DNA from: Anaeramoeba ignava BMAN
Lineage: Eukaryota > Protista > Anaeramoebae
Assembly (NCBI GenBank): GCA_028826165.1
Contig: JAPDFW010000143.1
Span: 1-64,000, forward strand
Direction: 5' to 3'
Length of the DNA: 64,000 bases
The translations under genes were made by a program, and so were the position numbers. This document shows, one piece after another, positions 31,106 to 48,855 of this stretch. The notes under the pieces were generated by a model. The model saw only the letters and a list, made by a program, of their open reading frames with translations, ran no database searches and had not been told where the DNA came from. Each line of letters starts with the position of its first letter. Within the stretch, counting starts at the first letter, position 1.

Positions 31106-36449
<5,344 letters not shown>

Positions 36450-36909: not shown

Positions 36910-39580
36910 TTAATCTAAATGTTTGCTTAACCATTGAAAACCTTCACGATAACCCATTCTTTTCAAAACTGAGCACATAAAAACTTCAATTGGACGAACT
37001 CCATCTTCTTTTTTTTCATCTTTTCCAGTTGTCAATGTCAATCCTAAAGAACTTCTTAATTCTTCTTCTGAACAAGCAGTTGGTTCATCAATTTTATTTC
37101 CTAAAACTAAAAATGGCACTTTTTCTAATTCTCCAGATTTAAGTAATTCATCTAATTCTTTTTTTGCTTCTCCAAATCTATCTCTGTCATTGGCATCTAC
37201 CAAAAAAACAATTGCATCAACAGTTGTATAATAATCTTTCCATAATCTTCTTGCTATTTTTAATTTTTAATTTTTAAATAAATTTAATTTTAATTTTTAA
37301 ATGAATTTTAATTTTAATTTTAATTTTAATTTTAATTTTAATTTTAATATTAATTTTAAATTTTATTTTTAATTTTAATTATAATTATAATTTTAATTTT
37401 AATTTTAATTTTAATTTTAATTTTAATTTTAATTTTAATTTATAAATGAATTTTAATTTTAATTTTAATTTATAAATGGAATTTTAATTTTAATTTATAA
37501 ATGAATTTTAATTTTAATTTATAAATGAATTTTAATTTTAATTTTCAAATAAATTTATAAATGAATTTTAATTTTAATTTTCAAATAAATTTATAAATGA
37601 ATTTTAATTTTAATTTTAATTTTAATTTATAAATGAATTTTAATTTTAATTTATAAATGAATTTATAAATGAATTTTAATTTTAATTTATAAATGAATTT
37701 ATAAATGAATTTTAATTTTAATTTATAAATGAATTTATAAATGAATTTTAATTTTAATTTATAAATGAATTTTAATTTTAATTTATAAATAAATTTATAA
37801 ATGAATTTTAATTTTAATTTATAAATGAATTTTAATTTTAATTTATAAATAAATTTATAAATGAATTTTAATTTATAAATGAATTTTAATTTATAAATGA
37901 ATTTTAATTTTAATTTATAAATGAATTTATAAATGAATTTTAATTTTAATTTATAAATAAATTTATAAATGAATTTTAATTTTAATTTATAAATGAATTT
38001 ATAAATGAATTTTAATTTTAATTTTAATTTTAATTTTTAATTTATAAATGAATTTTAATTTTAATTTATAAATGAATTTTAATTTTAATTTATAAATGAA
38101 TTTTAATTTTAATTTATAAATGAATTTTAATTTTAATTTCAATTTTCAAATGAATTTATAAATGAATTTTAATTTTAATTTTAATTTTAATTTTAATTTT
38201 AATATTAATTTTAATTTTAATTTTAATTTTTAATTTTAATTTTAATTTATAAATGAATTTTAATTTATAAATGAATTTTAATTTATAAATGAATTTTAAT
38301 TTTAATTTTAATTTTAATTTTTTAATTTTAATATTAATTTTAATTTTAATTTTTAATTTTAATTTTAATTTTAATTTATAAATGAATTTTTAATTTATAA
38401 ATGAATTTTAATTTATAAATGAATTTTTAATTTATAAATGAATTTTTAATTTATAAATGAATTTTAATTTATAAATGAATTTTAATTTATAAATGAATTT
38501 TTAATTTTAATTTTAATTTTAATTTATAAATGAATTTTGATTTTAATTTTAATTTATAAATGAATTTTAATTTTAATTTATAAATGAATTTTAATTTATA
38601 ATTTTCAAATAAATTTATAAATGAATTTTAATTTTAATTTTAATTTTAATTTTAATATTAATTTTAATTTTAATTTTAATTTAATTTTAAATTTAATTTT
38701 AATTTTTAATTTTAATTTTAATTTAATTTTAATTTTAATTTTAATTTTAATTTTAATTTTTAATTTTAATTTTAATTTTAATTTTAATTTTAATTTTAAT
38801 TTATAAATGAATTTTAATTTTAATTTCTATTTCATTTTTCAAATAAATTTATAAATGAATTTTAATTTTTAAATTTAATTTTAATTTTAATTTTAATTTT
38901 AATTTTAATTTTAATTTTAATTTTAATTATAATATTAATTTTAATTTTAATATTAATTTTTAATTTATAAATGAATTTTAATTTTAATTTATAAATGAAT
39001 TTTAATTTTATTTTAAATTTTATTTTAATTTTGATTTATAAATGAATTTATAAATTAATTTTAATTTTAAATTTTAATTTTAATTTTAATTTTAATTTTA
39101 ATTTATAAATGAATTTATAAATGAATTTTAATTTCTATTTCATTTTTAATGTTAAATTTCCATTCTAAAATTTTGATTGTTTGAATTTTATAAAAGAAAA
39201 AAACTTTCAATAAACAAAAATAAAATAAATTAAATTAAAATAAAAATTAAATAAATAATACCATCTTCATGACCACCAAGATCAAAAGCTTGGAATTTAA
39301 TTTTATCAATAGTAAGTTCTTCCATTGCTAAAAAGGAAAAAAAAAAGGAAAAAGAAAAAAATTTTTTGTTTTTAATTTTAAAAAAAAAATTTTATATTAA
39401 ATTTAATTCAAAAATACTTGGATGTAAAGTTGGTTCATGTTGAATCATAACGCTTTCTTTTAACATATGCATTAATGTTGTTTTTCCTGCGTTATCTAAT
39501 CCAAGAAATAATATTTTTGCAGATTTATTTGTTAATCCTAAATAATTCAATAAATCAAAAAACCAATTTATCAAAAACAT
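36910..39580 (-). CDS. SAR1: Sar1 COPII GTPase, 3 exons
   Basis: [60 protein letters not shown]. Confidence 0.97.
37254..39261 (-). repeat. Sar1 intron 2 (2 kb) with TTTATAAATGAATTTTAAT-type satellite
   Basis: GTATTA...ATAG boundaries on the minus strand, tandem units. Confidence 0.85.
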
Positions 39581-39783: not shown

Positions 39784-42700
39784 TCATTTTTGATTTTGGA
39801 AAATTTGAAAAAATGAAAATCCGATTTGTTTTGGTTCTTCTTTTGATTTATCTGGAAAGATTTGTTTTGCTTCTTCTTTTAATTTATTGCAATTTTCTAA
39901 TTCTTTGTCAATTTGTTCATTTAATTCTTGTTTATCTTGAGAAAGTTGATTTTCGAATTTTTTTATTTCTTCTAAATTTTGATTAATTACTAAATCAATA
40001 TCTTTTATATTTTTATGTTTTTGATCAATTCGTGAAAAATCATATTCTATATTTGAAATATCATACATTGATAAACAAGATTCTGCGATTTGATTGAATG
40101 TTTCTTCAAAATAATTCAAATCAATTTGTTCTTCCATTTCTGAATATTGATTTAATATTGATTCAGTTTCTCTTAAACATTCATTTATTTGATAAATTAA
40201 ATTTTGATTTTTTCTGATTTTTTCTTTTTTTTGAATTTTTGCTTGTTCAGCTTCTATTCTTTGTTTATTATCAATATCATTTTCATTTTGATTTTGATTT
40301 TGATTTTGATTTTGATTTTGATTTTGATTTTGATATTGATTTTGATTTTGATTTTGATTTTGATTTTGATTTTGATTTTGATTTTGATTTTGATTTTGAT
40401 TTTGATTTTGATTTTGATTTTGATTTTGATTTTGATTTTGATTTTGATTTTGATTTTGATATTGATTTTGATTTTGATTTTCATTTTGATTTTCATTTTG
40501 ATTTTCATTTTTGTGTTTCATTTTGTGTTTCATTTTGTGTTTCATTTTGTGTTTCATTTTGTATTTCATCTTGTATTTCATTTTGTATTTCATTTTGTGT
40601 TTCATTTTGTGTTTCATTTTGTGTTTCATCTTGTATTTCATCTTGTATTTCATTTTGTGTTTCATTTTGTGTTTCATTTTGTGTTTCATTTTGTATTTCA
40701 TTTTGTGTTTCATTTTGTGTTTCATTTTGTGTTTCATTTTGTGTTTCATTTTGTGTTTCATCTTGTGTTTCATCTTGTGTTTCATTTTGTGTTTCATTTT
40801 GTGTTTCATTTTGTGTTTTTGATTTATTATCTTCTTCTTTTTCATTTTCAGTAATAATTTCATTTTGTTCTTTGTTGTCTTTATCTGTTTCATTTCCTGT
40901 TATTTGTTTATTATCTTTATCTTTTTCTTTTTCTTTTTCTTTTTCTTCATTATTATTTTCTGTTTTATCTTCTGTTTCTTCTGCTTTATCTTCTGTTTGA
41001 TTTTGTGTTTGATTTTGATTTTGATTTTGATTTTGATTTTGATTTTGATTTTGATTTTGATTTTGAATTTGAATTTGATTTATATTTTCATTTTGTTCAT
41101 TATCATTTTCTGTTTCATTTTGTTCATTTTGTTCATTTTGTTCATTGATATCATTATCTTCTTGATTTGGTTCATTTTTATTTTGTTTATTATTTTGTTC
41201 ATTATTATCTTTATTTTCTTTATCTTTATTATCTTTTTCTTTTTCTTTTTCTTTTTCTTTTTCTTTTTCATTAATAATTTCATTTTGTTCTTTGTTGTCT
41301 TTATCTGTTTTATTTCCTGTTATTTGTTTATTATCTTTATCTTTTTCTTTTTCTTTTTCTTTTTCTTCATTATCATTTTCTGCTTTATCTTCTGTTTGAT
41401 TTTGTGTTTGATTTTGGTTTTGATTTTGATTTTGATTTTGATTTTGATTTTGATTTTGATTTTGATCTTCTGTTTCTTGTTTATTATCTTCTGTTTCTGA
41501 TTCATTATCATTTTCTGTTTCATTTTGTTCATTTTGTTCATTTTGTTCATTGATATCATTATCTTCTTGATTTGGTTCATTTTTATTTTGTTTATTATTT
41601 TGTTTATTATTATCTTTATTTTCTTTATTATCTTTATCTTTATCTTTATTATCTTCTTTTTCTTTTTCATTTTCATTAATAATTTCATTTTGTTCTTTGT
41701 TGTCTTTATCTGTTTTATTTCCTGTTATTTGTTTATTATCTTTATCTTTTTCTTTTTCTTTTTCTTTTTCTTCATTATTATTTTCTGCTTTATCTTCTGT
41801 TTGATTTTGTGTTTGATTTTGTGTTTGATTTTGATTTTGATCTTCTGTTTTTTGTTTATTATCTTCTGTTTCTTGTTTATTATCTTCTGTTTCTTGTTTA
41901 TTATCTTTATATTTATCTTTTTCATTTTGTTCATTTTGTTCATTGATACCATTATCTTCTTGATTTGGTTCATTTTTATTTTGTTTATTATTTTGTTTAT
42001 TATTTTGTTCATTATCTTTATCTTTATCTTTATTATCTTTTTCTTTTTCTTTTTCATTTTCATTTTGATTTTCATTTTGTGTTTGAATTTGAATTTGATT
42101 TTGAATTTGAATTTGAATTTGATTTATATTTTCATTTTGTTCATTATCATTTTCTGTTTCATTTTGATTTTGATTTTGATTTTGATTTTCATTAACAATT
42201 TCATTTTGTTTATTATTATCTTTATCTTGTATTTCATCTTGTATTTCATCTTGTATTTCATTTTGTGTTTCATTTTGTGTTTTTGATTTATTATCTTCTT
42301 CTTTTTCTTGAGTTTCAATAATTTGATTTTGTTTATTATCCTCTTCTTCTTTTTCATTTTCATTTTCTTTAATAATTTCATTTTGTTCTTTGTTGTCTTT
42401 ATCTGTTTTATTTCCTGTTATTTGTTTATTATCTTTATCTTTATATTTTTCTTTTTCTTCATTATCATTTTCTGCTTTATCTTCTGTTTGATTTTGTTTT
42501 TGATTTTGATTTTGATCTTCTGTTTTTTGTTTATTATCTTCTGTTTCTTGTTTATTATCTTCTGTTTCTTGTTTATTATCTTGTGTTTCTGATTTATTAT
42601 ATTTATCTTTTTCATTTTGTTCATTTTGTTTATTATTATCTTTATCTTGTATTTGATCTTGTATTTGATCTTGTATTTCATTTTGTGTTTCATCTTGTGT

Positions 42701-45115
42701 TTCATCTTGTGTTTCATCTTGTGTTTCATTTTGTGTTTCATCTTGTGTTTCATTTTGTGTTTTTGATTTATTATCTTCTTCTTTTTCTTGAGTTTCAATA
42801 ATTTGATTTTGTTTATTATCCTCTTCTTCTTTTTCATTTTCATTTTCTTTAATAATTTCATTTTGTTCTTTGTTGTCTTTATCTGTTTTATTTCCTGTTA
42901 TTTGTTTATTATCTTTATCTTTATATTTTTCTTTTTCTTCATTATCATTTTCTGCTTTATCTTCTGTTTGATTTTGTTTTTGATTTTGATTTTGATTTTG
43001 ATCTTCTGTTTCTTGTTTATTATCTTCTGTTTCTTGTTTATTATCTTCTGTTTCTTGTTTATTATCTTTATATTTATCTTTTTCATTTTGTTCATTTTGT
43101 TCATTGATATCATTATCTTCTTGATTTGGTTCATTTTCATTTTGTTTATTATTTTGTTCATTATTATCTTTATTTTCTTTATCTTTATTATCTTCTTTTT
43201 CTTTTTCATTTTCTTTTTCATTTTCATTTTCATTTTGATTTTGATTTTGATTTTGATTTTGATTTTGATTTTGATTTTCTGTTTCTTGTTTATTATCTTG
43301 TGTTTCTGATTTATTATCTTTATCTTTTTCATTTTGTTCATTTTGTTCATTTTGTTCATTTTGTTCATTTTGTTCATTGATATCATTATCTTCTTGATTT
43401 GGTTCATTTTCTGTTATTTGTTTATTATCTTTATCTTTATCTTTATCTTTTTCTTTTTCTTTTTCTTTTTCTTCATTATCATTTTCTGTTTTATCTGCTG
43501 TTTCTTCTGCTTTATCTTCTGTTTGATTTTGTGTTTGATTTTGTGTTTGATTTTGATTTTGATTTTGATCTTCTGTTTCTTGTTTATTATCTTCTGTTTC
43601 TGATTTATTATCTTTATATTTATCTTTTTCATTTTGTTCATTTTGTTCATTTTGTTCATTTTGTTCATTTTGTTCATTTTGTTCATTGATATCATTATCT
43701 TCTTGATTTGATTCATTTTTATTTTGATTATTATTTTGTTCATTATTATCTTTATTATCTTTATCTTTATTTTCTTTATCTTTATTATCTTCATTTTCAT
43801 TTTGATTTTCATTTTGTTCTTTGTTGTCTTTATCTGTTTTATTTCCTGTTATTTGTTTATTATCTTTTTCTTTTTCTTTTTCTTCATTATCATTTTCTGC
43901 TTTATCTTCTGTTTGATTTTGTGTTTTATTTTGATCTTCTGTTTTTTGTTTATTATCTTCTGTTTCTTGTTTATTATCTTCTGTTTCTGATTTATTATCT
44001 TTATATTTATCTTTTTCATTTTGTTCATTTTGTTCATTGATATCATTATCTTCTTGATTTGGTTCATTTTCATTTTGTTTATTATTTTGTTTATTATTAT
44101 CTTTATTTTCTTTATCTTTATTTTTATTATCTTCTTTTTCTTTTTCTTTTTCTTTTTCTTTTTCTTTTTCATTTTCAGTAATAATTTCATTTTGTTCTTT
44201 GTTGTCTTTATCTGTTTTATTTCCTGTTATTTGTTTATTATCTTTTTCTTTTTCTTTTTCTTTTTCTTCATTATCATTTTCTGCTTTATCTTCTGTTTCT
44301 TCTGCTTTATCTTCTGTTTGATTTTGTGTTTGATTTTGATTTTGATTTTGATTTTGATTTTGAGTTTTGATTTTGACTTTTGATTTTTGATTTTGATCTT
44401 CTGTTTCTTGTTTATTATCTTCTGTTTCTTGTTTATTATCTTCTGTTTCTGATTTATTATCTTGTGTTTCTGATTTATTATATTTATCTTTTTCATTTTG
44501 TTCATTGATATCATTATCTTCTTGATTTGGTTCATTTTCATTTTGTTTATTATTTTGTTCATTATTATCTTTATTTTCTTTATCTTTATTTTCTTTTTCT
44601 TTTTCATTTTCATTAATAATTTCATTTTGTTCTTTGTTGTCTTTATCTGTTTTATTTCCTGTTATTTGTTTATTATCTTTATCTTTATCTTTTTCTTTTT
44701 CTTTTTCTTTTTCTTTATTATCATTTTCTGCTTTATCTTCTGTTTGATTTTGTGTTTGATTTTGATTTTGATTTTGATTTTGATTTTGATTTTGATTTTG
44801 ATTTTGATTTTGATTTTGATTTTGATCTTCTGTTTCTTGTTTATTATCTTCTGTTTCTGATTTATTATCTTTATATTTATCTTTTTCATTTTGTTCATTT
44901 TGTTCATTGATATCATTATCTTCTTGATTTGATTCATTTTCATTTTGTTTATTATTTTGTTTATTATCTTTATCTTTATCTTTATTATTATCTTTATCTT
45001 TTTTTTCATTTTCATTTTCATTTTCATTAATAGTTGTATTTTGTGTTGTGTTTTCTGTTGTGTTTTGTGTTGTGTTTTGTGTTTTTGGTTTATTTTTTTT
45101 ATTTATCGTTTCCAT
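39784..45115 (-). CDS. Very large N/E/K/Q/D-rich repetitive protein with a C-terminal coiled-coil region; slip near 40508
   Basis: Stop-free 1.5k-aa frame from METINKK; recurring modules EPNQEDNDINEQ and KQITGNKTDKDNKEQNEII; unique tail in ORF 39784-40893. Confidence 0.7.
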
Positions 45116-45195
45116 TTTAAAAATGAAAAAAAATGAAAAAAATGAAAAAAAAAATTTGCAAAAAAACAAAAAAAAAACAAAAACAAAAATAACAT

Positions 45196-46544
45196 CTACC
45201 ATTTTTGTGTATGAACTTTAGTTTTAAATAACAAAATTGACATTGTTCCAACCATAAAATAAATCATATGATTTTCCATTGAAGTGACATTTGCACCAAA
45301 ATGTTGACCAACAATACAATTCCAAGATTTTCCATATTTTGTATCAAATGATTGTTTAATATATTGAGCAACTTCTTGTTCTGAATTCATTTTAGTGTAT
45401 AATGCGTTAATAGCTGTTCTTACTGCATCATTTTGCATATCTGGTGGCATGTCAACTGAATTAATCATAACAAACATGACAGGAACCATTGATGTCTTGT
45501 TAGTTGTTGTTTCTGTTTCTAAAAAAATTTTGATTTTGATTTTAATATTAATTTCGGAAAAAAATTTTAATTTTAATTATAATTTTAATTTTAATTTTAA
45601 TTTTAATTTTAATTTTAATTTCAATTTTAATTTTAATTTTAATTTTAATTTTAATTTTAATTTTAATTTTAATTTTAATTTTAATTTTAATTATAATTTT
45701 AATTTTAATTTTAATATTAATTTTAATTTTAATTTTAATTTTAATTTTAATTATAATTTTAATTTTGATTTTAATATTAATTTCAATTTTAATTTTAATA
45801 TTAATTTTGATTTTAATTTTAATTTTAATTTTAAAATGAATTTTAATTTTTAATTTTAATTTTAATTTTAATTTTAATTTTAATTTCAATATTAATTTCA
45901 ATTTTAATTTTAATATTAATTTTGATTTTAATTTTAATTTTAATTTTAATTTTAATTTTAATTTTAATTTTAATTTTAATTTTAATTTTAATTTTAATTT
46001 TAATTTTAATTTTAATTTTGATTTTAATATCAATTTTAATTATAATTTTAATTTTAATTTTAATTTTAATTTTAATTTTAATTTTAATTTTAATTTTAAT
46101 TTTAATTTTAATTTTAATTTTAATTTTAATATTAATATTAATTCTACCTTTAGATTCATTTCTTTCAATTTTTTGTAAAGAAGTTTTTTGAGGAGAATAA
46201 ATATAATCATCATTCAATTTTTGAGGTTTTGGAGAATTAGCAACTTTCCACAACATATCAGAATTTCTACTTATAACAACTTGTTCGACATTTTCTGGTT
46301 TAGAACTAAGAAGGGAAGTCATAGACTTTGAAATAACAAGATCTTGAGGTCTCAAAAATTTGAAGCAATATGGACATTTTGCTACTCCTCCATTGTTCTG
46401 TATGTGAGCTAGGAATGTTTGATGATCGAAACAATCAAAATGATTGCATTTTGTTCCTCTTACTGGTGTTCGAATTCGCTCTCCGTTTAGTGGATCTAAT
46501 AATGATACTACGTATTGTAATTCATCTTTTTTTTCAAATTCCAT
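45196..46544 (-). CDS. SP-RING (zf-MIZ) - dynein light chain LC8 fusion protein, 239 aa, 2 exons
   Basis: Exon 46148-46544 (397 nt) + exon 45196-45518 (323 nt) join in frame over GTAGAA...TTAG intron 45519-46147; SP-RING and LC8 motifs both present. Confidence 0.85.
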
Positions 46545-46619
46545 TTTTGAGAAAAGAAAAAAATGATTTCCAAAAATTGAAAAAAATAAATTTAAATTAA
46601 ATTAAAATTAAATCAAAAT

Positions 46620-46980
46620 TTAAATCTATATTTAAATTAATATTTAAATCAATATTTAAATCAATATTTAAATCAATATTTAAATCAAATATTTAAATCA
46701 ATATTTAAATTAATATTTAAATCAATATTTAAATTAATATTTAAATCAATATTTAAATTAATATTTAAATCAATATTTAAATCAATATTTAAATCAATAT
46801 TTAAATCAATATTTAAATCAATATTTAAATTAATATTTAAATTAATATTTAAATCAATATCTAAATCAATATTTAAATTAATATTTAAATTAATATTTAA
46901 ATCAATATTTAAATTAATATTTAAATCAATATTTAAATTAATATTTAAATTAATATTTAAATCAATATTTAAATTCAAAT
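46620..46980. repeat. Intergenic 12-bp ATTTAAAT(C/T)AAT tandem repeat
   Basis: Roughly 30 tandem units between the 46544 start and the 47100 stop. Confidence 0.85.
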
Positions 46981-47099
46981 TCAAATGATTTTTTTTGGAA
47001 TTCTTTAAAGGAAAATATGCTACATAAACCTTTTTTATTGAAAGAAAAATTGTAAAAAGAAAAATTGTAAAAAGAAAAAGAAATTCTTGGTTTTTGAAG

Positions 47100-48855
47100 T
47101 TAATTTTTGTTAGATGATTTTAATTTATCATTTTCATTTCTTAATTTATCGTTTTCCTTTTTCAAAACTTCATTTTCATATTCAAGTTCACTAATTCTTT
47201 TACGAAGTTGAGAAATAAGTTGTTTATCATCAAGATTAGTAGATTGATTGCTATTAGAAGAATGATGATAACGAGAAGAAGTTGAATGTGTTTGAGATTT
47301 TGAAGGAGAATGAGTATGCGAAGTTCTAGAAGAATAATGATGATAAGAATGTCCAGAATTTATTGGTTTTGTTTCTTGTTTTTGGATTGGTGATTTTCTT
47401 TGACTTTGTGTTTGATTTTGACGTGAATTAATAGGTGATTTTGTTTCATTTGGTTTTGTTTCTTGTTTTTGGATTGGTGATTTTCTTTGAGTTTGAGTTT
47501 GACTTTGACGTGAATTAATAGGTGATTTTGTTTCATTTGATTTTGTTTCTTGTTTTTGGATTGGTGATTTTCTTTGACTTTGACTTTGAGTTTGACTTTG
47601 ACGTGAATTAATAGGTGATTTTGTTTCATTTGATTTTGTTTCATTTGGTTTTGTTTCATTTGGTTTTGTTTCTTGTTTTTGACTTTGTGTTTGACTTTGA
47701 TTTTGACGTGAATTAATAGGTGATTTTGTTTCATTTGGTTTTGTTTCTTGTTTTTGGATTGGTGATTTTCTTTGTGCTTGACTTTGATTTTGACGTGAAA
47801 TATAAGGTGATTTTGTTTGAGTTTGAGTTTGAGTTTGAGTTTGGCTTTGATTTGGAGATTTGTTTTGATTTTGATTTTGATTTTGACGTGAAGTATAAGT
47901 TGTTCTTGTTTGAGTTTGGCTTTGATTTGGTGATTTGTTTTGATTTTGATTTTGACGTGAAGTATAAGTTGTTCTTGTTTGACTTTTGACTTTGATTTGG
48001 TGATTTGTTTTGATTTTGATTTTGATTTTGACGTGAAGTATAAGTTGTTCTTGTTTGACTTTGAGTTTGACTTTGATTTGGTGATTTGTTTTGATTTTGA
48101 TTTTGATTTTGACGTGAAGTATAAGTTGTTCTTGTTTGACTTTGACTTTGATTTGGAGATTTGTTTTGATTTTGATTTTGGTTTTGACGTGAAGTATAAG
48201 TTGTTCTTGTTTGAGTTTGACTTTGAGTTTGACTTTGATTTGGAGATTTGTTTTGATTCTGGTTTTGACGTGAAGTATAAGTTGTTCTTGTTTGGCTTTG
48301 ATTTTGACTTTGACGTGAATTAAAAGGGGATTTTGATTCTTGAGATTTATCAAGATTTGATTGATTTTTCGCAAGAGAATTTTGAGTTTTATTTGGGGTG
48401 AATTGAGAATTAAAACGGGGTTGTTGATTAGGTTGAGTTTGGGGGGGTTTGGTGTATTGAGTATGTGAGCGAGCTGAGCGATTTTGGGATACCATGACAG
48501 GACTTGATTGGGAAAGGTTCTGTTTTGGAGACTGTTGTCTAAGGGGGGTTTGTGGGTTTGGTTTAGGCGGGGGTTGAGGAGCAGCTTTTGCTGCAGTTGT
48601 GAACCTTCTCTGTCTTTGTGGGCGTGATTCTTCACGAAAAACTGTTATCATTGGTCGAGAATCTTCTTTTGAAAATGACATTTCGGTTTCAACTTCTTTT
48701 TCTTTCTTCTTTGTACCATTTGGTACACTTGTTGGTATTGGATCTTTCATTGCAAAGTTTATTTGTGGATATACTAATTCACCTCTTTCTTTTGCAAATT
48801 GAACTGTTCGTCGAAAAATTGCTTTTAATTCTTTGTCAGTTGGTGTATAATCCAT
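47100..48855 (-). CDS. Disordered S/Q/T/N/K repeat protein with C-terminal coiled coil; slip near 47985
   Basis: ORFs 47731-48855 and 47100-48635 share repeats TRTTYTSRQNQNQNKSPNQSQ and TKSPINSRQ; ends LRKRISELEYENEVLKKENDKL. Confidence 0.7.

What the first reader, a model, noticed from the sequence alone, without database searches (positions are those of the whole stretch)
45196..46544. Spliced fusion of an SP-RING (SUMO E3-type) domain to dynein light chain LC8
Seen: the two ORFs are one gene. Exon 1 ends ...AAA G|GTAGAA at 46148, and exon 2 resumes TTAG|AA ACA GAA at 45518, giving 720 nt in frame (239 aa). The N-half VSLLDPLNGERIRTPVRGTKCNHFDCFD...KCPYC fits the PIAS/Siz zf-MIZ consensus (first Cys is Asp; C-x-H and CxxC are kept). 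The C-half DMPPDMQ..IKQSFDTKYGKSWNCIVGQHFG..ILLFK is LC8. Known: SP-RINGs recruit Ubc9~SUMO, while LC8 is normally a stand-alone dimeric hub binding TQT motifs. Inference: a minimal SUMO ligase without SAP/PINIT domains that uses LC8 for dimerisation and substrate selection. I know of no described protein with this architecture. The junction also creates KETET, resembling the KxTQT ligand (possible self-binding, speculative).
Basis: partly seen in the sequence, partly recalled or inferred. Interest (0 to 1): 0.85.

Follow-up and report, generated by a model that had tools for sequence, protein, structure and literature searches.

The report
SP-RING SUMO-ligase domain fused to LC8
A small two-exon gene of the anaerobic amoeba Anaeramoeba ignava appears to join the genome's only detectable SUMO-ligase (SP-RING) domain to a diverged copy of the dimeric hub protein LC8. 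I found no paper describing this combination, but I could not confirm the splice with RNA.

Summary
The window is Anaeramoeba ignava BMAN. On the minus strand, 46544-46148 encodes a Pfam-significant zf-MIZ/SP-RING and 45518-45196 a Pfam-significant LC8. They are separated by a 629-nt, 2.9% GC GT-AG interval filled with (AAAATT)n.

The fusion is therefore annotated but not discussed in any paper I found.

Indirect evidence favours it at about 0.85:
- The SP-RING frame has no stop before the array.
- The interval holds only one usable GT and one usable AG.
- 13 of 14 array-bearing, homology-anchored introns in chaperonin genes carry the same hexamer in the sense orientation.
- The LC8 ATG has an internal-Met-like context.

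New here:
- This is the only zf-MIZ match in the 42.8-Mb genome.
- The LC8 is a second paralogue, 41% identical to the canonical one, with a remodelled ligand groove.
- The SP-RING keeps its zinc ligands but lacks the conserved Trp.

The function, a dimeric LC8-tethered SUMO E3, is inference. The "KETET" self-binding idea has no support. Interest is moderate.

The parts
46148..46544 (-). Exon 1. It runs from the ATG at 46544-46542, codes residues 1-132 and supplies the first base of codon 133 (phase-1 donor AAG|GTAGAA).
   Evidence: GC is 31%. There are 19 open codons upstream with no ATG and no AG, so no upstream exon can join. It equals P0001 residues 1-132.
46365..46493 (-). SP-RING (zf-MIZ) domain, residues 18-60. 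Zinc-ligand pattern is C33-x-H35 ... C57-P-x-C60, plus C38-F-D.
   Evidence: Pfam PF02891 at 43.5 bits against a 33.5 cut-off. Siz1, Siz2 and PIAS2/3 structures match at E 7e-9 to 2.5e-3. The near-invariant columns of 49 homologues are all kept. AF2 pLDDT is 93-98 over residues 10-100.
45519..46147 (-). Putative phase-1 GT-AG intron, 629 nt.
   Evidence: GC is 2.9%. It holds a single usable GT and a single usable AG. The length lies within the published distribution (mean 300, longest 4168 nt). The PWM from 21 anchored introns scores the donor at 3.7 bits and the acceptor at 3.9 bits, both inside the leave-one-out range.
45526..46143 (-). (AAAATT)n hexamer array in sense orientation, about 100 copies, filling the intron.
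   Evidence: TRF gives period 6, 102.7 copies and 89% matches. The same array in the same orientation fills 13 of 14 array-bearing CCT-gene introns.
45196..45518 (-). Exon 2. It supplies the last two bases of codon 133, residues 134-239 and the TAG stop at 45198-45196.
   Evidence: GC is 29%. It equals P0001 residues 133-239.
45490..45518 (-). Ten-codon stretch (ETETTTNKTS) between the acceptor and the LC8 ORF's own ATG. It is part of the disordered linker.
   Evidence: GC is 31%, which is coding-like, against 3-21% for the 29 nt before seven credible start codons. AF2 pLDDT is below 50 over residues 105-149.
45220..45468 (-). LC8 (Dynein_light) domain, residues 150-232 of the fusion.
   Evidence: Pfam PF01221 at 106 bits. 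PDB LC8/DYNLL chains match at E 3e-22, about 48% identity. Foldseek gives target TM of about 0.8 to LC8 structures. It is 41% identical to the genome's canonical LC8.
46557..46566 (-). TCATTTTTTT motif 13-22 nt upstream of the exon-1 ATG. It may be an initiator-like element.
   Evidence: The motif lies within 60 nt of the ATG in 6 of 7 first-checked starts and 9 of 30 Ras-family starts. It is found in 0 of 30 antisense controls. It is absent from the 100 nt before the LC8 ATG. This is weak evidence.

Best explanation
This is one two-exon gene of Anaeramoeba ignava. A transcript starting just upstream of 46544 is spliced from the donor at 46148|46147 to the acceptor at 45519|45518. The splice removes a 629-nt (AAAATT)n intron. 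The product is a 239-aa protein with four parts. Residues 10-62 form an N-terminal SP-RING. Residues up to about 100 form a short segment like the SP-CTD, the C-terminal domain that follows the SP-RING in the yeast SUMO ligase Siz1. Residues 105-149 form a disordered linker of about 45 residues. The C-terminus is a diverged LC8 domain. Most likely an LC8 gene lying downstream of a small SP-RING gene was captured by splicing: the LC8 Met (residue 143) still aligns with Met1 of stand-alone LC8. Inferred mechanism: the SP-RING binds Ubc9~SUMO, and the LC8 part dimerises or pairs with canonical LC8. That would yield a bivalent ligase whose LC8 groove docks short linear motifs of clients or scaffolds, replacing the missing SAP and PINIT targeting domains. 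Shown here: the sequence features, the domain identities and the fit of the intron to this genome. Inferred: splicing (about 0.85), ligase activity, dimerisation and client choice.
For: The public protein P0001 is identical to the spliced model and carries both Pfam domains. Both domains pass curated cut-offs and match solved Siz1/PIAS and LC8 structures.

Splicing:
- The SP-RING frame has no stop before the array. Left unspliced, it would run into about 100 residues of KIKI.
- There is exactly one usable GT and one usable AG, and the acceptor is in frame with LC8.
- The 21 homology-anchored CCT introns are 67-1175 nt long with 1-12% GC. Of the 14 that carry arrays, 13 carry (AAAATT)n in sense orientation, for example 632 nt with 86 copies and 700 nt with 106 copies.
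- Arrays elsewhere are mostly flanked by long open frames ending at a GT and starting after an AG.
- The published intron mean is 300 nt and mean GC is 8%.

LC8 start: the LC8 ATG has T at -3 and 4 G+C in positions -10..-1. Internal ATGs show at least 4 G+C in 53% of 100 cases, against 7% of 30 true starts. The 29 nt before it are 31% GC against 3-21% at real starts.

Context: this is the sole zf-MIZ match in the genome. The paper's MIZ family row is empty for A. ignava, while SUMO is listed. Ulp-type proteases are present. The zinc ligands are intact.
Against: The donor GTAGAA has G at +4, which none of the 21 reference introns shows, and both splice-site scores fall in the lower half of the range. 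The LC8 ORF has its own ATG at the canonical position, and intergenic spacers here can be as short as about 80 nt, so a separate LC8 transcript is possible. No orthologue with the same fusion was found, so conservation and selection are untested. The Trp two residues before CPxC (W or F in 41 of 49 homologues) is Ala55. LC8 positions H55, Y65, H68, F73, Y77, I34 and K36 are all changed, so both ligase activity and TQT-type binding are uncertain.
Confidence: 0.6

Rival explanations
1. These are two neighbouring genes wrongly merged by gene prediction. A small SP-RING protein either runs into a KI-repeat tail or ends elsewhere, and an ordinary stand-alone 97-aa LC8 paralogue is transcribed from its own start inside or after the array.
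For: The LC8 ORF starts with an ATG at the same position as Met1 of the canonical 89-aa LC8. Intergenic spacers in this genome can be tiny and can hold repeat arrays, such as the 12-mer array at 46597-46986. The donor is atypical at +4. No RNA evidence was obtained.
Against: The SP-RING frame has no stop codon before the array, so this model needs a tail of about 100 aa translated from a microsatellite. The hexamer in sense orientation is typical of introns. The LC8 ATG context looks internal. No TCATTT motif lies upstream of it. The public model is the fusion.
Confidence: 0.13
2. The fusion transcript is real, but the SP-RING is not an active ligase. The protein would be an LC8-family adaptor with a Ubc9- or SUMO-binding or purely structural zinc module, or a young fusion drifting toward loss.
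For: The conserved Trp before CPxC is Ala. PINIT, SAP and a recognisable SIM are absent. The LC8 groove is remodelled. The fusion was seen in one species only.
Against: All zinc ligands and the CFD motif are kept, and residues 10-100 fold with pLDDT above 93. Homology runs past the RING into the Siz1 SP-CTD region. This is the only SP-RING in a genome that keeps SUMO and Ulp proteases, which argues that it is needed. From general knowledge, not tested here: Nse2-type ligases work without that Trp.
Confidence: 0.2
3. The locus makes both products: the spliced fusion, and an LC8-only protein from an internal start or from translation at Met143.
For: The canonical LC8 start position is retained. 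Nothing rules out a second transcription start.
Against: The context at the LC8 ATG is poor for a start. No initiator-like motif lies upstream. The genome already has a canonical LC8.
Confidence: 0.15
4. The SP-RING is the organism's Nse2/Mms21, the SMC5/6-bound SUMO ligase, rather than a PIAS/Siz-type enzyme.
For: zf-Nse also passes its cut-off at 28.5-29.5 bits, and this gene is the best zf-Nse match in the genome. It lacks the PIAS Trp, as Nse2 does.
Against: zf-MIZ scores higher. The closest structures and homologues are Siz and PIAS, and similarity extends into the SP-CTD. The SP-RING is at the extreme N-terminus, so there is no room for the N-terminal SMC5-binding helices of Nse2.
Confidence: 0.05

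Closest known systems
Siz/PIAS-family SP-RING SUMO E3 ligases (yeast Siz1/Siz2, human PIAS1-4)
   Same: It has an SP-RING with the C-x-H...C-P-x-C zinc site and the CFD motif, followed by a segment homologous to the start of the Siz1 SP-CTD.
   Different: It has no SAP, PINIT or recognisable SIM. The RING begins at residue 12. The conserved Trp before CPxC is Ala. The C-terminus is an LC8 domain, which none of the 149 best foreign homologues has.
LC8 / DYNLL1-2 dynein light chain hub proteins
   Same: It has a full-length Dynein_light fold of 83 aligned residues, about 48% identical to animal and trypanosome LC8, with target TM of about 0.8.
   Different: It is not stand-alone: about 142 residues precede it. 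Positions H55N, Y65N, H68S, F73M, Y77M, I34S and K36Q differ, while the genome's other LC8 keeps most of them. A 7-residue C-terminal extension is added.
Nse2/Mms21
   Same: It is a small SP-RING protein without PINIT or SAP that relies on a partner module for targeting, and zf-Nse passes its threshold.
   Different: Nse2 has its RING at the C-terminus, after SMC5-binding helices. Here the RING is N-terminal and the partner module is LC8.
Public record: 'dynein light chain 2 cytoplasmic [Anaeramoeba ignava]' (P0001)
   Different: It is named and classified only as a dynein light chain (PANTHER PTHR11886). The genome paper's MIZ family row is therefore empty for this species. The fusion is not discussed anywhere I could search.

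Membership tests
SP-RING (zf-MIZ, PF02891) SUMO E3 domain | Profile match above the curated threshold | tested here: met
   43.5 bits against 33.5, and 45.1 bits in the six-frame genome scan.
SP-RING (zf-MIZ, PF02891) SUMO E3 domain | Single zinc site C-x-H ... C-x-x-C plus the CFD motif | tested here: met
   C33, H35, C57 and C60 are invariant in all 49 aligned homologues and are present here. C38, F39 and D40 are also present. The mapping to Siz1 C377/H379/C400/C403 is from memory.
SP-RING (zf-MIZ, PF02891) SUMO E3 domain | Aromatic residue (Trp) two positions before CPxC, used in E2 contact | tested here: not met
   It is Ala55 here. Among 49 homologues it is W in 35 and F in 6. Its role in E2 contact is from general knowledge.
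Siz/PIAS family (full architecture) | SAP and PINIT domains N-terminal to the SP-RING | tested here: not met
   The RING starts 11 residues after Met1. The upstream frame is closed after 19 codons and has no AG acceptor. Pfam finds no PINIT or SAP.
Siz/PIAS family (full architecture) | SUMO E3 activity with Ubc9 | not testable with these tools
   This needs an in vitro conjugation assay. SUMO and Ulp proteases exist in the genome.
LC8 / Dynein_light (PF01221) | Profile match and fold | tested here: met
   106 bits against 29.1. PDB E-value is 3e-22. Foldseek target TM is about 0.8.
LC8 / Dynein_light (PF01221) | Conserved groove and dimer-interface residues for TQT-motif binding | tested here: inconclusive
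   W54, F62, T67, Y75, F86 and E35 are kept. H55N, Y65N, H68S, F73M, Y77M, I34S and K36Q are changed. The residue list is from memory, and dimerisation cannot be modelled with the single-chain tool.
Nse2/Mms21 | N-terminal SMC5-binding helices followed by a C-terminal SP-RING | tested here: not met
   The RING is at residues 12-62 of 239 and nothing precedes it.
Spliceosomal GT-AG intron of A. ignava | GT...AG borders, very low GC, length within range, and joins two frames without a stop | tested here: met
   with the published statistics.
Spliceosomal GT-AG intron of A. ignava | Spliced reads across the junction | not tested

The most novel reading that the evidence does not exclude
In A. ignava all PIAS-type SUMO ligation runs through an LC8 module. 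The genome's single SP-RING would be covalently tied to a diverged LC8 whose remodelled groove reads a short linear motif. Substrates would then be chosen by a peptide motif on a dimeric hub rather than by SAP or PINIT domains. This would also be a Rosetta-stone hint that LC8 hubs and SUMO ligases cooperate more widely.
Probability: 0.25. Interest if true: 0.7.

Novelty: new variant of a known kind. Interest (0 to 1): 0.45.

Why it matters
SP-RING ligases normally get their specificity from SAP, PINIT and SIM modules or from a partner complex (Nse2 on SMC5/6). LC8 is normally a free dimeric hub. A natural covalent fusion would be a new way to target SUMOylation, through a linear-motif hub.

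Gene fusions often predict interactions, so this one would also suggest a functional link between LC8 and SUMO ligases in other eukaryotes. It appears to be the only SP-RING in this genome, while the sister species is listed with over 30 MIZ-family genes. That makes it a compact system for asking what a minimal SUMO E3 needs.

The practical value is limited until the transcript and the activity are shown. The fusion has so far been seen in one species.

Tried and rejected
- **Relatives by word-indexed protein search:** three searches found only the protein itself.
- **Exhaustive HMMER search with exon 1:** it gave 1552 SP-RING hits. Of the top 150, only the protein itself also contains LC8 by phmmer. 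Hits below rank 150 were not examined.
- **ESM Atlas neighbours:** they are MIZ-only or LC8-only clusters.
- **Metagenome scan:** nothing found.
- **The look-up of encoding contigs:** no record.
- **Cluster names of ten hits:** none came from Anaeramoeba, so the A. flamelloides orthologue question stays open.
- **Gene-prediction method:** I could not find it in the genome paper or its supplements.
- **Rad60-SLD scan for SUMO:** it was swamped by ubiquitin, so I used the paper's PANTHER row instead.
- **TCATTT initiator-like motif:** it looked decisive at 6 of 7 starts, but fell to 9 of 30 in a larger sample, so it carries little weight.
- **KETET as a TQT mimic:** rejected, because it has no Gln anchor and the groove is diverged.
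- **Exon joining:** I never joined the exons myself. Searches of my own model were run exon by exon, by reference. The 239-aa sequence used later is the database protein P0001 returned.

Full report
**Identity of the window.** The assembly has 42,843,398 bases in 147 contigs. That matches Table S1 for Anaeramoeba ignava BMAN in PMC11550330. The best protein hit is an NCBI A. ignava protein. The window is about 18% GC and full of A+T microsatellites.

**The observation.** Two ORFs lie on the minus strand.
- The first ORF is 46544..45843. Its first 132 residues are ordinary protein sequence. The rest is KIKIKI translated from a hexamer array.
- The second ORF is 45489..45196 and codes 97 aa.
- Pfam scores residues 18-60 of the first ORF as zf-MIZ (43.5 bits, cut-off 33.5) and zf-Nse (28.5 bits). 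It scores the second ORF as Dynein_light at 106 bits.
- The first frame leaves coding-like sequence at AAA G|GTAGAA (46148|46147). After TTTTTTTAG| (45519|45518) the frame of the LC8 ORF is open.
- Exons of 397 and 323 nt give 239 codons plus a stop.
- The 629-nt interval is 2.9% GC, against 31% and 29% for the exons. It holds about 100 copies of the hexamer.
- Its only GT is the donor. Its only AG besides the one inside GTAG is the acceptor.

**Already in the databases.** I searched the first ORF restricted to residues 1-132. This returned one protein, P0001: 239 aa, "dynein light chain 2 cytoplasmic [Anaeramoeba ignava]", with precomputed Pfam PF02891 + PF01221. The fusion is therefore the public gene model. 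It is named after the LC8 half only.

In the genome paper's family table, the dynein light chain family (PTHR11886) has two A. ignava genes. The MIZ family (PTHR10782) cell is empty for A. ignava, while A. flamelloides has 32 or more genes per strain. No paper in the library holds SP-RING with LC8, or zf-MIZ with Dynein_light.

I never joined the exons myself. My own searches went exon by exon, by reference. Later calls used the database protein P0001.

The paper says stranded RNA-seq was mapped with a 10-kb maximum intron. I could not find how the gene models were built. I therefore built indirect tests.

1. *Reference introns.* A six-frame scan for Cpn60_TCP1 gave the CCT (chaperonin) genes exon by exon. 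Requiring frame continuity and exact continuity of the profile coordinates fixed 21 introns.
   - They are 67-1175 nt long with 1-12% GC.
   - Of the 14 that hold at least 20 hexamer copies, 13 carry (AAAATT)n in the sense orientation. Examples are 632 nt with 86 copies, 700 nt with 106 copies and 807 nt with 101 copies. They often end ...AAAATTAAAATTAG|.
   - The interval here is 629 nt with 76 exact sense copies and 2 antisense copies.
   - Published values are mean 300, median 102 and longest 4168 nt, with mean GC 8.1%.
2. *Other arrays.* Other arrays of this hexamer in the window sit inside genes in the sense orientation. Three lie in a kinase gene at 32-34 kb. Across all the DNA I held, most arrays are flanked by more than 40 open codons before a GT and after an AG.
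3. *Splice-site scores.* A position weight matrix from the 21 introns scores the donor at 3.7 bits (leave-one-out range -1.7 to 8.6). It scores the acceptor at 3.9 bits (range -3.5 to 9.4). Both are acceptable but in the lower half. G at +4 is seen in none of the 21.
4. *No stop before the array.* The SP-RING frame has no stop codon before the array. A stand-alone gene would have to translate about 100 residues of microsatellite.
5. *Start context.*
   - The LC8 ORF's ATG has T at -3, and 5 A with 4 G+C in positions -10..-1.
   - Of 30 Ras-family start codons, 83% have at least 7 A and 7% have at least 4 G+C.
   - Of 100 internal in-frame ATGs, 1% have at least 7 A and 53% have at least 4 G+C.
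   - The 29 nt before the LC8 ATG are 31% GC, against 3-21% before seven credible starts.
   - A TCATTTT motif upstream of many starts is present before exon 1 and absent before LC8. It occurs at only 9 of 30 starts, so it weighs little.

Against splicing: the LC8 Met aligns with Met1 of the genome's 89-aa single-exon canonical LC8. The next gene's ATG follows the LC8 stop by only about 80 nt, so short spacers exist. I put the spliced model at about 0.85.

**The SP-RING half.**
- It matches Siz1, Siz2, PIAS2 and PIAS3 structures (E 7e-9 to 2.5e-3). The alignment runs past the RING into the region after it...PENVEQVVISRNSDMLWK against Siz1 ...QKNVEQVELTSDGKW.
- In an alignment with 49 homologues, the near-invariant L15, P18, P27, C33, H35, C38, F39, D40, C57, C60 and L79 are all kept.
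- Position 17 is Cys in 26 homologues and Asp in 23.
- The Trp two residues before CPxC (W in 35, F in 6 of 49) is Ala55 here. This is a caveat for E2 engagement.
- There is no room for SAP or PINIT. The upstream frame closes after 19 codons and has no AG.
- A six-frame scan finds this as the only zf-MIZ match in the genome, and as the only zf-Nse match above the cut-off. The sub-threshold zf-Nse hits I inspected are a C3HC4 RING and a U-box.
- Caveat: a 50-residue domain split by introns could escape this scan. The paper's empty MIZ cell agrees with the result, however.
- SUMO (M0811_06637) and six Ulp-type protease matches show that the pathway exists.

**The LC8 half.**
- It aligns over 83 residues with LC8/DYNLL structures (E 3e-22, about 48% identity).
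- It is only 41% identical to the genome's canonical LC8.
- In DYNLL1 numbering, W54, F62, T67, Y75, F76, F86 and E35 are kept.
- H55N, Y65N, H68S, F73M, Y77M, I34S, K36Q and S88T are changed. The canonical paralogue keeps H55, H68, F73, Y75 and Y77.
- Which residues line the groove is from my memory of the LC8 literature, not a tool result.
- The fold is kept, but client specificity and dimer strength cannot be read from sequence.

**Structure.** AlphaFold2 with a 51-row alignment gave three regions:
- pLDDT 93-98 for residues 10-100;
- below 50 for residues 105-149;
- 63-85 for the LC8 part.

Foldseek matched the LC8 part to LC8 structures with target TM of about 0.8. The model is two folded domains on a disordered tether of about 45 residues, and the exon junction lies inside that tether. 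The tool folds single chains only, so dimerisation and any self-binding were not tested. KETET lacks the Gln anchor of TQT motifs, and nothing supports the self-binding idea.

**Relatives.**
- Three word-indexed searches found only the protein itself.
- The exhaustive search with exon 1 gave 1552 SP-RING hits. None of the 149 best foreign ones contains LC8.
- Atlas neighbours are MIZ-only or LC8-only clusters.
- A metagenome scan found nothing.
- Whether A. flamelloides has the fusion remains open.

**Verdict.** The gene structure is probable but not proven. The architecture is already in the databases, but no paper I could search describes it.

The most likely working model is a minimal SP-RING ligase tethered to a diverged LC8 that supplies dimerisation and docking. 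That model is inference. Two sequence caveats apply: Ala for the conserved Trp, and a remodelled LC8 groove.

I rate it a new variant of known kinds, of moderate interest. What raises the interest is that it seems to be this organism's only SP-RING.

Noticed in passing
window 32368-32671, 33175-33345, 33887-34194, 37262-38821 (all -); loci L019, L020, L023, L029, L034 and others: (AAAATT)n hexamer arrays of 20-140 copies fill introns almost always in the sense orientation (13 of 14 array-bearing CCT introns). This is a strand-biased intronic microsatellite with no obvious explanation.
   Followed up: partly
window 46557-46566 (-), 45119-45160 (-); loci L045, L047, L051, L056, L058, L061, L069, L070, L073: A TTTTCATTTTT motif, reminiscent of the Trichomonas initiator TCAYT, lies 12-60 nt upstream of many start codons. 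It occurs at 9 of 30 Ras-family starts and 0 of 30 antisense controls. Start codons also sit in a strongly A-rich -10..-1 context.
   Followed up: partly
window 40505-45117 (-): A low-complexity ORF of about 1,540 aa, rich in N, Q, E, K, D and T, with nested repeats. It starts only about 80 nt downstream of the LC8 stop codon, so the spacer between the two genes is very short.
   Followed up: no
window 46597-46986: A 390-nt array of a 12-mer (TTAAATCAATAT, 32 copies) fills the spacer between the upstream gene's stop (47100) and the exon-1 ATG. Intergenic DNA is therefore also microsatellite, but with a different unit.
   Followed up: no
window 47100-48855 (-): The upstream gene shows two long overlapping ORFs in different frames (47100..48635 and 47731..48855) across an 87-nt repeat region. 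This points to an intron or a frameshift there. Its C-terminus looks like a coiled coil.
   Followed up: no
G000 whole genome; L005 (C117:130445-133588), L007 (C86:327453-330572): No Nse2/Mms21-like SP-RING was detectable. The sub-threshold zf-Nse hits I inspected are a C3HC4 RING and a U-box. Either the gene is split by introns or the SMC5/6 SUMO ligase is missing.
   Followed up: partly
proteins P0002, P0004, P0018, P0041 (foreign hits): Several database proteins carry three or four SP-RING units in tandem. P0002 (1519 aa) holds four near-identical PIAS-like blocks. These could be real multi-RING ligases or assembly artefacts.
   Followed up: no
G000:C15:57787-58038 (L001:1489-1758): The canonical single-exon 89-aa LC8 of the same genome has no TCATTT motif and a pure A/T leader in the 100 nt before its ATG.
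   Followed up: no
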